A stretch of 64,000 bases of DNA, from assembly GCF_001194135.2 (NCBI RefSeq), contig NC_068999.1, positions 23,019,671 to 23,083,670 of the forward strand, given 5' to 3'. The stretch comes from Octopus bimaculoides. Taxonomy: Eukaryota. The notes below the pieces were generated by a model. The model was not told where the DNA came from, did not search any database, and worked only from the letters and a program-made list of their open reading frames with translations. This document shows, in pieces, positions 24,128 to 26,703 of this stretch; position 1 is the stretch's first letter; every line of letters starts with the position of its first letter. A program made the position numbers and the translations under genes.

Positions 24128-26703
24128 TATTTCTTTCTTTTACTGGGGAAGGCCAGTTTATGGCATATCGCCAGACCCCAAAACCTGTTGGCCTAAGACC
24201 ACTTCAAATTACGGAGGGGGAAAGGCCTTGTATGAATGTAAACAAGGGGATTATCTCCCTTTGCTATTAGCTATCAACTTCCAGCTGTGTTGCCATCTTG
24301 CAGATCCCAAAATGCCAGCTGGAATTTCCAAAAATGCAAACATGGCCTGAAAATCTCTGTTCTGGAGTTAAGGATGCTCCCTGGCTCGAGCAAGTCTTTT
24401 AGGATTCTTAAACATTCAGCTATACATAACTTGCAGTGCTTCATCTTGATGTAGGGGGCCTAGGTTTTTGAGGATTTTCTATGAGATCGAGTGTGGGATT
24501 CCATTGTTTCTTAGTTGCCAGACATGACTGGCCTGCAATGTTACGTATCTCCTTTCCAGGACCTTGAAGGAAAATTTATGGTTAGAAATGCATTACTTGA
24601 AAGAATTCCCAGTACATCCAATGAATTTCCGTGGGCACACATTGTCGACACTGCACCTGTTACTGTTGCTGTTGTCATTGTTACTGCCGTTGCCAAACAA
24701 GAGGCTAATGTACATCAACACAACATCTTGTCACCTACCCATCATGTTAAAGAAGCTGGTTAAGGATGTTAGTAAGAGGATTTTGAGCCTTCAGTGCAGC
24801 AGCCCCATACTATAATGAGGCCCTAACTGTCAGCGGGTTTAGGGACCGCATCTCCTATATGTCAGAACCCAACAACCACAGAAGGAAGCGCTGCAGAAAT
24901 ACAATTTGGTTTGCATCCCCTCTTCTCCCTTAATACAATAATGCCTGTAAGTAGACTATTCCTTAAATTAAAAGACAAGCACTTCACTAGCTCCCATAGG
25001 TACGGGCCCATTTTCAACAGGCACAACATTAGGGTCTCATTTAGCTGTGCCCCCCATATTAAGAGCAGCCTAGTTAGCGCCCCTAAGCCACTAGAAGATG
25101 AAGGTTGTACATGCAGGAACCACAACAGTTGCCCAGTAGGAGGCCACTGCAAAACCAAAGGGGTCATCTATCAAGCTGAAGTACTAGTGAACCCTGGCTG
25201 GTACCAGTGGCAGGAGCAATAGCAGCCATAGGAATGAAAACAGAACCAACAACACCACCGCCACCATTACTGCAGTGGACAGCATTAGTAATGTCAACAA
25301 CAGCAGCACCATTGACAGCACGGACACCCCCCCCCTGACTGCACCATTACTAACATCAACAATGGCAACACCGCCACCAGCACCAGCCTCACCAGTAGCT
25401 TCCCTGACAGCAGAACTGACAACATCCACACTAGCAGACCTGACAGCAGATCTGATAGTAGCAGCAGAAACATGTCCAGTGTCATTGCCAGCTATGATGA
25501 CAGCAACAGCAATGGTAGCGGCCCTAGCAGAAGTACTGGCATAAAAAATGACTAATGACACCTCTAACGGCAGTGGTAGCTCCCCCACCATCGGTGAAGA
25601 CCCCAATATTAGAAGTAACAACAACAACAATAGCTGCATTATCAGCAGTATTAACAACAACAGCACCTTCTCTATAACCAGCAATGATGATAGCCTTACC
25701 AATGCTACCACCAACCCCACCATTACCAGTACCAAAACCAGCAGCCCCAGCGCCATCAACAGCAATATCGACGACAATGGCTCAACAACAACATCAGCAG
25801 CACCAACACCAACGCCAGCAGCCCCGGCTCAAACAACAGCAATATTAATGATATCAGCAACAACAACGGCAGCAACAACAGTAACAACAACAAAAGGTGC
25901 AGCACCAACAACACACACAGGGGTGATAACATTCACTCCGGTGGCACCAACACTAGCAGCCCCAGCTGCAGCATCAACAGCAACAACAACAGCACCATCG
26001 GCGATGGCAGCAACAGCAACAACGACAACAGCAACACTAACAGGTGCAGTGTCGACAACGTGCGCCCACGGAAATACGCTTGATGTACTGGGAATTCTTT
26101 CAAGCAACACATTTCCAACCATAAATTCTCCTTCAGGGTCCCAGAAAGGAGATAGGTAACATTGCAGGCCAGTCACATCTGGCAGCTAAGGGACAATGGA
26201 ATCCCACACTTGATTTCATGGAAAATCCTCAAAAACCCAGGCCCCTACATCAACGGGATGAAGCACAGCAAGTTATGCAAAGCTGAATGTGCAAGAATCC
26301 TTAAAAACTCGCTCAAGCCAGGGAGTATCCTTAACTCCAGAATGGAGATTTTTTGTTTGAATTTTAGGAAATTCCTGCTGGCGTTTTGGGATCTATGAGA
26401 CGGCAGTACAGCCGGAAGTTGATATCCAATAGCAAAGGGAGATAATCCCCTATCGTTTACCTTCATAGCTTTTTCAAGACAGCAAGATGGCAGCACAGCC
26501 TGAAGTCGATAGTCGATAGCTAATGGCAAAGGGAGATAATCCCCTTGTTTACATCCGTACAAGGCCTTTCCCCTTCCATAATTTGAAATGGTCTTAAACC
26601 AACAGTTTTGGGAGTCTGATGATACGCCATAAGGTAAACTCTTATGGACAAGAAACCCAGGGTAATCCCCTAAACCAGCCTTCCCCAGTAAAAAGATGAA
26701 ATA
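24128..26703 (+). mobile_element. Penelope-like element: RT C-terminus, Cys linker and split GIY-YIG, with an inverted copy of its 3' end placed 5'
   Basis: AAPYYNEAL..SGF; FSLNT..PVSRLFLKLKDKHF...FNRHNIRVSFSC; GCTCRNHNSCPVGGHCKTKGVIYQAEV; KYA*CTGNSFKQHISNHKFSFR; ASHIWQLRD...ISWKILK..PYING...KLC..E...LNSRMEI. 24128-24690 is the reverse complement of 26015-26703. Confidence 0.9.
26606..26676 (+). ncRNA. Type I hammerhead ribozyme motif in the PLE 3' region
   Basis: CUGAUGA at 26616-22; stem II CCAUAAG/CUUAUGG; GAAA at 26652-55; stem III ACCC-A-GGGU; GUA cleavage triplet; imperfect stem I (UUUGGGAGU/AUCCCCUAAA). Confidence 0.7.

What the first reader, a model, noticed from the sequence alone, without database searches (positions are those of the whole stretch)
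25150..26160. GIY-YIG endonuclease split by a microsatellite-encoded Asn/Ser insert of about 290 codons between GIY and YIG
In canonical GIY-YIG nucleases the two motifs lie about 10 residues apart. Here GVIYQAEV (about 25160-25185) and K(Y/F)IGCTGNSFK (about 26072; the inverted copy reads KFIGCTGNSFK) are separated by about 880 bp of AAC/AGC/ACC repeats. The insert length keeps both halves in the same frame, although this decayed copy has compensating internal frameshifts and a stop. The same site holds about 25 aa of N/S-rich sequence in the 57.5-kb copy and more than 90 codons in the 35.4-kb copy. The different PLE at 54.1 kb has normal spacing. This points to a PLE subfamily with a hypervariable low-complexity loop in its nuclease hairpin: either a tolerated or functional disordered (prion-like N/S) insertion, or a spliced intron. 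I do not know of this being described.
Basis: partly seen in the sequence, partly recalled or inferred. Interest (0 to 1): 0.8.

Follow-up and report, generated by a model that had tools for sequence, protein, structure and literature searches.

The report
Asn/Ser-rich insert inside octopus retrotransposon nuclease
A dead copy of a Penelope-like retrotransposon in the octopus genome carries an inherited, in-frame stretch of about 296 Asn/Ser/Thr-rich codons in the first hairpin of its GIY-YIG nuclease; this is a new position for a phenomenon already described in rotifer Penelope elements.

Summary
GVIYQAEV (25160-25183) and KYA*CTGNSFK (26072-26104) lie in one frame, separated by 888 bp (296 codons) of A/C-rich, codon-periodic low-complexity sequence. 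In 91 relatives the two motifs are 15-26 residues apart; here the distance is 304.

The element is a 5'-truncated, decayed Hydra-clade Penelope-like element (PLE). [quoted passage not shown] It sits in (TA)n, next to an inverted partial copy. The genome is assembly GCA_001194135.2 (Octopus bimaculoides).

The insert did not grow at this locus. Homologous inserts occur at three or more other places (P0001, P0201/L004, L002), and similarity exceeds composition-shuffled controls (z 4.9-13). P0001 reads GIY plus 143 insert codons in one ORF. P0201 reads 235 insert codons plus the YIG half in one ORF. Between two insert-bearing lineages, changes in the nuclease C half favour third positions (7/9/24 non-CpG; 48% synonymous against 22.5% expected). 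This points to selection on the nuclease after the insert arose.

An intron is not supported. Long in-frame N-rich inserts in Penelope ORFs are already known from Adineta vaga (2013), but only in interdomain linkers. I rate this a new variant of a known kind, of moderate interest.

The parts
24060..24133 (.). TA-rich microsatellite on the left flank, the likely (TA)n target
   Evidence: Hydra-clade PLEs insert into (TA)n (PMC8557442)
24125..24695 (-). Inverted, 5'-truncated partial copy holding the 3' UTR, the nuclease C half (KFIGCTGNSFK at 24596-24628) and the last 22 or so codons of the insert (24629-24695). It is 88% identical to the main copy.
   Evidence: (inverted repeats I1-I6)
24696..25159 (+). 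Main copy, 5'-truncated: RT C-terminal tail (KRLMYINTTSCH at 24699), degenerate WFNPP region, and CxCx5C linker (CTCRNHNSCPVGGHC at 25106-25150). It has frameshifts and stops.
25160..25183 (+). GIY strand (GVIYQAEV), beta-1 of the nuclease
25184..26071 (+). Insert of 888 bp (296 codons), N 23%, S 23%, T 13% along the reading path. It has four frame switches and one stop, and is homologous to the inserts of P0001, P0201/L004 and L002.
26072..26395 (+). YIG strand and the rest of the nuclease (KYA*CTGNSFKQHISNH ... LNSRMEIFCLNFRKFLLAFWDL). Stops at 26081 and 26153.
26396..26706 (+). 3' UTR of the element, with a 94-nt-spaced direct repeat and a CTGATGA...GAAAC motif pair. It is conserved in L004, L002 and the inverted arm.
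26755..27096 (.). TA-rich right flank, including (TA)n at 27057-27096, running into an assembly gap
57134..57702 (-). Second subfamily copy. GIY (AVVYRIKV) at 57532-57555, a 27-codon N/S loop at 57451-57531, and a decayed YIG (MKTCQING) from 57451 downwards. Contig L001 is 70% identical at the nucleotide level and has a loop of the same size.
35300..35692 (+). Third copy. CKTKGVIYEVEV ends at 35397 and is followed by at least 98 N/S-rich codons that do not align with the main insert. A mariner remnant lies downstream at about 35881.
54155..54263 (+). A different Hydra-type copy with normal GIY-YIG spacing (NSIYQGKITTGSDIFFIYM)

Best explanation
This locus is a dead, 5'-truncated copy of a Hydra-clade Penelope-like retrotransposon in Octopus bimaculoides. 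It inserted into a (TA)n tract together with an inverted partial copy.

In the lineage it belongs to, the tip of the beta1-beta2 hairpin of the C-terminal GIY-YIG nuclease grew into a 220-300-codon, in-frame, Asn/Ser/Thr-rich tract. In relatives that loop is short and already rich in S, T and N. I infer that growth came from slippage or reiterative copying of AAY/AGY/ACY codons.

The tract was part of the element's ORF and was passed on through retrotransposition, which is shown. Its length and sequence drift freely while the A-x-C codon composition is kept, which is also shown. The nuclease behind it stayed under purifying selection for some time after the insert existed; the data show this, but on one comparison of about 93 codons. 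The simplest reading is that the tract is a tolerated, probably disordered surface loop and not a disruption. Activity of the nuclease itself is inferred and was not tested.

The copy in the window has since decayed through frameshifts, stops and loss of the catalytic Arg.
For: Identity of the element:
- The N half finds 1160 relatives, including roughly 700-aa RT plus C-terminal EN proteins.
- Family invariants are C-x-C-x5-C, the Y of GIY, Y.G, K/R, CxxC, E, N and CxH, as described for the Hydra clade (PMC8557442).
- An AF2 model of the nearest normal-loop relative, P0002 (pLDDT 82.8), gives beta 70-79, a loop at 80-85, beta 86-94, then alpha-alpha-beta-alpha.
- The best Foldseek matches in BFVD are GIY-YIG homing endonucleases (prob 0.94-0.99). 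The top PDB hit is T4 EndoII.
- Architecture and (TA)n flanks. Genome.

Inheritance of the insert:
- P0001, P0201/L004 and L002 carry alignable inserts.
- Against residue shuffles, z is 13.0, 4.9 and 5.8.
- L002 has different junctions, so it is an independent insertion.

Reading frame:
- P0001 reads GIY plus 143 insert codons in one ORF.
- P0201 reads 235 insert codons plus 92 nuclease codons in one ORF.
- The inverted arm reads GNGSNNDNSNSNRCSVDNVCPRKFIG in one frame.
- 888 is 3 x 296.

Selection after the insert arose:
- In the C half, L004 against the shared state of the two window arms gives 13/12/27 changes at codon positions 1/2/3 (p=0.018).
- Outside CpG context the counts are 7/9/24 (p=0.0015). 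There are 25 synonymous and 27 nonsynonymous changes, against 22.5% synonymous expected (p=4e-5).
- Terminal branches are flat.
- The insert itself gives 75/102/60, with the second position highest, reflecting N/S/T codon interchange.
- Taken together, the copies retain the catalytic R (P0201), E (both window arms) and N.
Against: - No intact full-length RT-EN ORF with the insert was found. All five insert-bearing sequences are fragments or decayed, and two (L002, L004) have lost the GIY motif.
- AAY/AGY/ACY codons are two mutations away from any stop, and T is only 14%. An open frame across the insert is therefore weak evidence of selection.
- The selection signal rests on one lineage pair and about 93 codons. 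Recombination or template switching between PLE lineages could have moved the insert after the nucleases had diverged.
- Pfam does not recognise the GIY-YIG domain, and the PDB fold match is weak (E=0.9).
- I could not survey the genome, so copy number, copy ages and the existence of insert-free sister copies of the same subfamily are unknown.
Confidence: 0.68

Rival explanations
1. The insert killed the nuclease. The lineage then spread only as a non-autonomous passenger, mobilised in trans by insert-free PLEs or by endonuclease-independent insertion. Frame continuity would then be a by-product of trinucleotide slippage and stop-poor codons.
For: All copies seen are defective, and GIY is lost in L002 and L004. 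The insert shows no third-position bias. N/S/T codons resist nonsense mutations and T is 14%. A. vaga Penelope machinery can act in trans (PMC3846280).
Against: The nuclease C half shows a third-position and synonymous excess on the branch joining two insert-bearing lineages. The catalytic R, E and N are each retained in at least one copy. The hairpin tip is a topologically permissive site.
Confidence: 0.17
2. The tract is a microsatellite that expanded independently at each locus after insertion and was never part of an active element.
For: The octopus window is full of microsatellites. Codon-like ACC/AAC/AGC tracts occur without PLE context at 33.4 and 34.3 kb. The 35.4 kb insert does not align with the main insert (z -0.8). 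Insert length differs between copies.
Against: Inserts at four loci share ordered landmarks and beat shuffled controls. The inverted arm and the main copy share the insert's 3' end. L001 and the 57.5 kb copy keep a loop of the same size at 70% nucleotide identity.
Confidence: 0.04
3. The tract is a retained spliceosomal intron, which PLEs are known to carry, and is removed to restore a normal hairpin.
For: In-frame GT-AG pairs exist. For example, 25201/26049 would leave the loop LVNPGCVDNVRPRKY, and there is a CTAAC 10 nt upstream of that AG. PLEs can retain introns (PMC3846280, PMC8557442).
Against: The donor GGTACC corresponds to an Asn-Thr codon pair in P0001, so it is not conserved. There is no polypyrimidine tract (T 9%). 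The sequence has strong codon periodicity and its N/S phase is continuous with both flanks in several copies. The tract is about 50% GC in a genome of about 33% GC. AG is frequent simply because AGC codons abound. P0201 is a single-exon model.
Confidence: 0.03
4. The tract was captured from elsewhere by template switching during PLE replication, as proposed for A. vaga, and did not grow in place.
For: The A. vaga precedent and its proposed mechanism (PMC3846280). The inverted arm breaks inside the insert. Three mutually unalignable tracts occupy the same site. Free-standing tracts of similar composition lie nearby.
Against: No donor sequence was found. The tract at 34.3-34.8 kb is no more similar than shuffled controls. 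Family loops at this site are already S/T/N-rich seeds, for example P0149 VTTNNNNNEDNN. A graded series of 15-26, about 36, at least 98 and 220-296 residues fits stepwise growth.
Confidence: 0.15

Closest known systems
Asparagine-rich in-frame insertions in Penelope ORFs of the rotifer Adineta vaga (Arkhipova, Yushenova, Rodriguez 2013, Mob DNA 4:19; PMC3846280)
   Same: Both are long low-complexity N-rich coding tracts inside a PLE ORF that do not interrupt it. Both arise where short (AAY)n seeds exist and recur independently at the same relative position. In both, part of the tract is found in inverted orientation next to the element.
   Different: The A. vaga tracts are 460-554 aa (or 1.5 kb) with 25-30% Asn. 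They sit in interdomain linkers, between RT and EN or between core RT and thumb, in Penelope/Poseidon-type elements. The octopus tract is 220-296 aa with N 16-23%, S 22-23% and T 13-15%. It sits inside the catalytic GIY-YIG core between beta-1 and beta-2, in a Hydra-clade element of a cephalopod.
Hydra-clade Penelope-like elements (Craig, Yushenova, Rodriguez, Arkhipova 2021, MBE 38:5005; PMC8557442)
   Same: Shared features are a C-terminal GIY-YIG EN, a CxCx5C linker, no CCHH finger, CxxC and CxH around the conserved E and N, a DKT motif in the RT of full-length relatives, (TA)n targets, inverted or tandem insertion structures, and aquatic invertebrate hosts including Mollusca.
   Different: No insert in the nuclease hairpin is mentioned in the text of that paper that I read. 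No hammerhead ribozyme was detected here by Rfam.
Canonical GIY-YIG nucleases (I-TevI and T-even Seg homing endonucleases, T4 EndoII, UvrC)
   Same: They share the beta-beta-alpha-alpha-beta-alpha core with Tyr on both hairpin strands and catalytic R, E and N. They are the best structural matches to the model.
   Different: They have short hairpin loops, and sequence similarity is too low for Pfam to detect. No insert of hundreds of residues between GIY and YIG is known to me; that statement rests on my own knowledge and is not exhaustive.
Asn-rich low-complexity insertions within conserved domains of Plasmodium falciparum and Dictyostelium proteins (my own knowledge)
   Same: They are in-frame, slippage-driven N-rich loops tolerated at surface positions of globular domains in AT-rich genomes. 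NCBI even named P0201 'DDB_G0287625-like', after a Dictyostelium protein.
   Different: Those are host proteins, not a transposon nuclease, and there is no evidence of a shared origin.

Membership tests
GIY-YIG nuclease superfamily | GIY and YIG motifs on two adjacent beta strands | tested here: met
   GVIY at 25160 and K(Y/F)IG at 26072/24628. Y72 and Y91/G93 are invariant in alignment A1. The AF2 model has a hairpin at 70-79 and 86-94.
GIY-YIG nuclease superfamily | Catalytic Arg in helix 1, and Glu and Asn downstream | tested here: met
   R102, E161 and N177 are conserved in A1. Among the octopus copies, R is kept in P0201, E in both window arms and N in all. The window main copy has R to H.
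GIY-YIG nuclease superfamily | Recognition by the curated profile (Pfam GIY-YIG) or by PDB sequence search | tested here: not met
   There is no Pfam hit for the composite or for eight relatives; the only trace is T5orf172 at E=0.16. A profile against PDB sequences found nothing.
GIY-YIG nuclease superfamily | Fold similarity to solved or predicted GIY-YIG structures | tested here: inconclusive
   BFVD top hits are Seg-type and other homing endonucleases, EndoII and a 'GIY-YIG nuclease', with prob 0.94-0.99 and E 0.01-0.08. The PDB top hit is T4 EndoII, but at E=0.9 and TM 0.44-0.46.
Hydra-clade Penelope-like elements | RT followed by a C-terminal EN in one ORF | tested here: met
   Full-length relatives P0008, P0040, P0120 and P0144 (697-726 aa) match at residues 480-600, and P0008 has a weak RVT_1 hit. 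The window copy keeps the RT tail at 24699-24868.
Hydra-clade Penelope-like elements | CxCx5C linker, and no CCHH finger inside GIY-YIG | tested here: met
   CTCRNHNSC at 25106-25132. C51, C53 and C59 are invariant in A1. No Cys pair lies between GIY and YIG.
Hydra-clade Penelope-like elements | DKT (not DKG) motif in the RT | tested here: met
   ADKTANLY in P0008 and SDKTRNLY in P0040. It cannot be tested in the truncated window copy.
Hydra-clade Penelope-like elements | Insertion into (TA)n, with inverted or tandem partial copies | tested here: met
   TA-rich flanks at 24060-24133 and 26755-27096, and an inverted arm at 24125-24695. L002 starts with (TA)n followed by an inverted 3' end. L004 has a TA-rich 3' flank.
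Hydra-clade Penelope-like elements | Canonical hammerhead ribozyme motifs | tested here: inconclusive
   There is no Rfam hammerhead match at the gathering score or at E<=10. A conserved CTGATGA...GAAAC pair lies in the 3' UTR, but I could not draw a canonical three-way junction from it.
N-rich ORF inserts of Penelope elements (A. vaga type) | Long low-complexity Asn-rich tract that keeps the ORF open | tested here: met
   P0001 and P0201 read through 143 and 235 insert codons. N is 16-23% and N+S+T is 54-58%, so Asn content is below the 25-30% reported for A. vaga.
N-rich ORF inserts of Penelope elements (A. vaga type) | Located in an interdomain linker (RT-EN or core RT-thumb) | tested here: not met
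   The insert lies between beta-1 and beta-2 of the nuclease core. A modest N/S-rich stretch in the RT-EN linker does occur in the separate 54 kb copy.
Spliceosomal intron | Conserved GT-AG boundaries, a polypyrimidine tract and no coding phase | tested here: not met
   The donor is not conserved, T is 9% in the last 76 nt, and the tract has strong codon periodicity in phase with both flanks.
Microsatellite | Head-to-tail array of a short unit | tested here: not met
   Tandem Repeats Finder finds only short arrays (20-68 bp, 64-85% matches) inside the 888 bp. The tract is complex enough to align between loci.

The most novel reading that the evidence does not exclude
An active octopus PLE lineage ran its GIY-YIG nuclease with a disordered, prion-like Asn/Ser-rich domain of 220-300 residues threaded through the catalytic hairpin. 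On this reading the domain is not a mere passenger. It could be used for RNP condensation or for tethering to repeat DNA, and it could be generated and resized at each retrotransposition by reiterative copying by the telomerase-related RT.
Probability: 0.12. Interest if true: 0.7.

Novelty: new variant of a known kind. Interest (0 to 1): 0.45.

Why it matters
The beta1-beta2 hairpin of a GIY-YIG nuclease carries both catalytic tyrosines. If the enzyme works with about 290 disordered residues at the hairpin tip, that defines a very permissive insertion site in a small nuclease fold, which is relevant to enzyme engineering.

The finding also extends the puzzling 'N-rich insert' habit of Penelope-like elements in two ways: from rotifers to cephalopods, and from linkers into a catalytic core. 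That strengthens the idea that the habit follows from how PLEs replicate.

A practical point follows for annotation. Such copies are annotated as host genes (XP_014771448.1, 'DDB_G0287625-like'), and the two nuclease halves are missed by Pfam.

Tried and rejected
- Pfam on the joined halves and on relatives gave no GIY-YIG hit.
- A profile against PDB sequences found nothing.
- The word-indexed search with the joined halves found only P0001. The last search, with an insert-containing profile, was swamped by low-complexity words and added nothing. No census of copies was therefore possible.
- P0001's DNA is not on record. The window's own 203-aa insert ORF is not on record either.
- A literature search for the two SRA run numbers did not identify the organism behind L001 and L002.
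- Rfam found no hammerhead at gathering or at E<=10.
- I tested whether the G/T-rich tract at 34.3-34.8 kb is an inverted arm of the 35.4 kb copy. It is no better than triplet-shuffled controls, so I rejected the idea.
- Frame openness as evidence of selection was rejected as weak. T is 14%, two frames are open over long stretches, and N/S/T codons are two steps from any stop.
- The minus-strand 197-aa ORF at 25184-25777 is a Leu/Val-rich complement artefact.
- The codon-position test on the N half (window against L002) and between the two window arms was flat, so it says nothing about selection.
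Full report
**What is at the coordinates**

On the + strand, one reading frame gives a 105-codon open stretch (24869-25183). It starts PTTTEG..., includes MPVSRLFLKLKDKHFTSSHRYGPIFNRHNIRVSFSC...CTCRNHNSCPVGGHCKTKGVIYQAEV and ends at 25183. 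The same frame resumes at 26057 with NVRPRKYA*CTGNSFKQHISNHKFSFRVPERR*VTLQASHIWQLRDNGIPHLISWKILKNPGPYINGMKHSKLCKAECARILKNSLKPGSILNSRMEIF. Between QAEV and KY lie exactly 888 bp, or 296 codons, with composition A .36, C .32, G .18, T .14. Tandem Repeats Finder sees only short, weak arrays of period 3-21. The tract is therefore cryptically simple and codon-periodic, not a clean microsatellite.

All are present:
- The 57.5 kb copy (- strand) has a 27-codon N/S stretch after AVVYRIKV.
- The 35.4 kb copy has CKTKGVIYEVEV followed by at least 98 N/S-rich codons. A mariner remnant lies downstream (HTH_48, E=4e-5).
- The 54.1 kb copy has normal spacing.
- An inverted arm reads KFIGCTGNSFK.

**What the element is**

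The window's 455-aa ORF at 2127-3491 (-) is found exactly in NCBI assembly GCA_001194135.2, chromosome CM046619.1. A homologue from the same assembly is named Octopus bimaculoides.

An exhaustive phmmer search with the N half gave 1160 hits. They include roughly 700-aa proteins in which this region lies C-terminal to a reverse transcriptase (P0008, P0040, P0120, P0144). The family consensus is CNCRxKxxCPLxGxC...VIYxAxV(loop)YIGxTxxxFKxRYxxH...LSKxIWxLK...IxWxI...CxLCxxEK...LNxRxEL...CxH. This matches the Hydra clade of Penelope-like elements as defined by Craig et al. 2021: C-terminal GIY-YIG, a CxCx5C linker, no CCHH finger, CxxC and CxH beside the conserved E and N, DKT in the RT, and (TA)n targets (PMC8557442).

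Pfam does not see the nuclease. An AlphaFold2 model of P0002, the nearest relative with a normal loop, has pLDDT 82.8. It shows a beta hairpin (70-79 and 86-94) followed by alpha-alpha-beta-alpha. Its best structural matches among viral proteins are GIY-YIG homing endonucleases (prob 0.94-0.99), and the top PDB match is T4 EndoII, though weakly (E=0.9). The octopus insert maps to the hairpin tip, residues 80-85 of P0002.

**Architecture of the locus**

- TA-rich tract, 24060-24133.
- Inverted 5'-truncated copy, 24125-24695 (-), 88% identical to the main copy. Its break point lies inside the insert.
- Main 5'-truncated copy, 24696-26706 (+), beginning in the RT tail.
- TA-rich tract and (TA)n, 26755-27096, running into an assembly gap.

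This is the head-to-head arrangement typical of PLEs.

**How unusual the spacing is**

In 91 family members with both motifs the VIY-to-YIG distance is 15-26 residues, with a mode of 15-17. Here it is 304. In the 57.5 kb copy and its relative L001 it is about 36.

**The insert is inherited, not grown at this locus**

Three other sequences carry the same tract.
- P0001 (224 aa) has a UniParc number close to that of an O. bimaculoides RefSeq protein. It reads the N half, GVIYEAKV and 143 insert codons in one ORF.
- P0201 is XP_014771448.1, 'uncharacterized protein DDB_G0287625-like [Octopus bimaculoides]'. It reads 235 insert codons and 92 nuclease codons from KYEGCTGNS in one single-exon ORF. 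It lies on another chromosome (L004).
- L002 is a Logan contig with its own (TA)n and inverted 3' end junction. It carries the first 180 bp or so of the insert.

The inserts share ordered landmarks, such as TSLT(N/S)SFP, SSPGSNN and CST(G/N)NT(R/H)R. They score far above residue-shuffled controls: z=13.0 for window against P0001, 4.9 for window against P0201, and 5.8 for P0001 against P0201. The 35.4 kb insert does not align with them (z=-0.8). The same site therefore holds at least two, and probably three, unrelated or unrecognisably diverged tracts.

**Reading frame**

The N/S-rich reading is continuous with GIY in P0001, in the 35.4 kb copy and in the 57.5 kb copy. It is continuous with YIG in P0201, in the window main copy and in the inverted arm (GNGSNNDNSNSNRCSVDNVCPRKFIG).

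In the window copy, the path guided by P0001 and P0201 switches frame at about 25195, 25330 (a C8 run), 25540 and 25775, and meets one stop at 25542. An open frame by itself proves little here. T is only 14%, two frames are open over long stretches, and AAY/AGY/ACY codons are two mutations away from any stop.

**Was the nuclease still in use after the insert arose?**

Both the window pair and L004 carry the homologous insert, so their common ancestor had it. In the C half (about 93 codons), I compared L004 with sites where the two window arms agree. Differences fall 13/12/27 on codon positions 1/2/3 (p=0.018). Excluding CpG contexts the counts are 7/9/24 (p=0.0015). There are 25 synonymous and 27 nonsynonymous changes, against 22.5% synonymous expected at random (p=4e-5). 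Changes private to either window arm are flat (4/5/10 and 8/10/4).

This is the signature of purifying selection on the nuclease in insert-bearing master elements, diluted by later neutral decay. Inside the insert the pattern is 75/102/60, with the second position highest. That reflects interchange among AAC, AGC and ACC codons: composition is kept while sequence is free. The N-half comparison with L002 is flat and uninformative.

Caveats: this is one lineage pair and a short region, and recombination between PLE lineages could have moved the insert.

**Intron?**

In-frame GT-AG pairs exist because AGC codons supply many AGs. One pair (25201/26049) would restore a loop of normal size. Several points argue against splicing:
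- The donor corresponds to an Asn-Thr codon pair in P0001, so it is not conserved.
- There is no polypyrimidine tract.
- The tract is about 50% GC in a genome of about 33% GC.
- It has a coding phase continuous with both flanks.
- The P0201 gene model reads straight through it.

I give this reading about 3%.

**Comparison with what is known**

[quoted passage not shown] Those tracts are 460-554 aa or 1.5 kb, with 25-30% Asn, and they are in frame. They recur independently at the same relative position, arise where short (AAY)n motifs pre-exist, and in one case part of the insert is found inverted upstream of the element. The authors proposed self-priming and template jumps (PMC3846280).

The octopus case shares all of this, with three differences. 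The tract is inside the catalytic core, not an interdomain linker. It is as rich in Ser as in Asn (N 16-23%, S 22-23%, T 13-15%). It is in a Hydra-clade element of a mollusc. The seed idea also fits: loops at this site in relatives are already S/T/N-rich, for example VTTNNNNNEDNNIEKEDEMVYIG in P0149.

**Verdict**

The intron alternative does not hold, and the claim of no precedent is only partly right. The copy in the window is a long-dead fragment.

What remains open is whether the nuclease was active with the insert and whether the tract does anything. That needs a genome-wide census and biochemistry, neither of which I could do with these tools.

Noticed in passing
window 53302-54692 (+), especially about 53590-53700: A separate Hydra-type PLE copy with a normal GIY-YIG loop has an N/S-rich stretch (NPIDTNSISSNQDMKSSHNGNNNINFSSNTNTKSRN) in the linker between the RT tail and the WFNPP region. 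That is the position where A. vaga Penelope carries its N1 insert.
   Followed up: partly
window 33426-33825 (+) and 34301-34825 (-): Codon-like ACC/AAC/AGC low-complexity tracts with no adjacent PLE homology. The second lies 500 bp upstream of the 35.4 kb copy but is no more similar to its insert than triplet-shuffled controls. They could be orphan inserts or potential donors.
   Followed up: partly
window 26617-26660 (+); L004 about 7250-7300; L002 about 60-110 (-): A CTGATGA...GAAAC motif pair in the PLE 3' UTR is conserved in three of four copies. It resembles a hammerhead core but is not matched by any Rfam hammerhead model even at E<=10.
   Followed up: partly
window 35881-36200 (+): A mariner/Mos1-like transposase remnant (Pfam HTH_48, E=4e-5) lies just downstream of the truncated 35.4 kb PLE copy.
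   Followed up: partly
window 42662-43170 (+): A LINE-like RT fragment (RVT_1, E=2e-4, LRFTDDIALIA) abuts a PLE nuclease C-half fragment that begins near its YIG motif.
   Followed up: no
window 2124-3491 (-): An intact 455-aa ORF rich in N, D, S and K has no Pfam match. It is identical in GCA_001194135.2 and is possibly a host exon or gene of unknown function.
   Followed up: partly
L004 5985-6030; L002 about 950-960: Two independent insert-bearing copies have lesions exactly at the GIY motif. L004 has a duplicated ATGCAGGAC in place of GVIY, and L002 has a 22-bp deletion.
   Followed up: no
window 26410-26451 and 26504-26545: A 42-nt direct repeat (83% identical, 94 nt apart) lies in the PLE 3' UTR. 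Only one unit is present in the inverted arm, L004 and L002.
   Followed up: no
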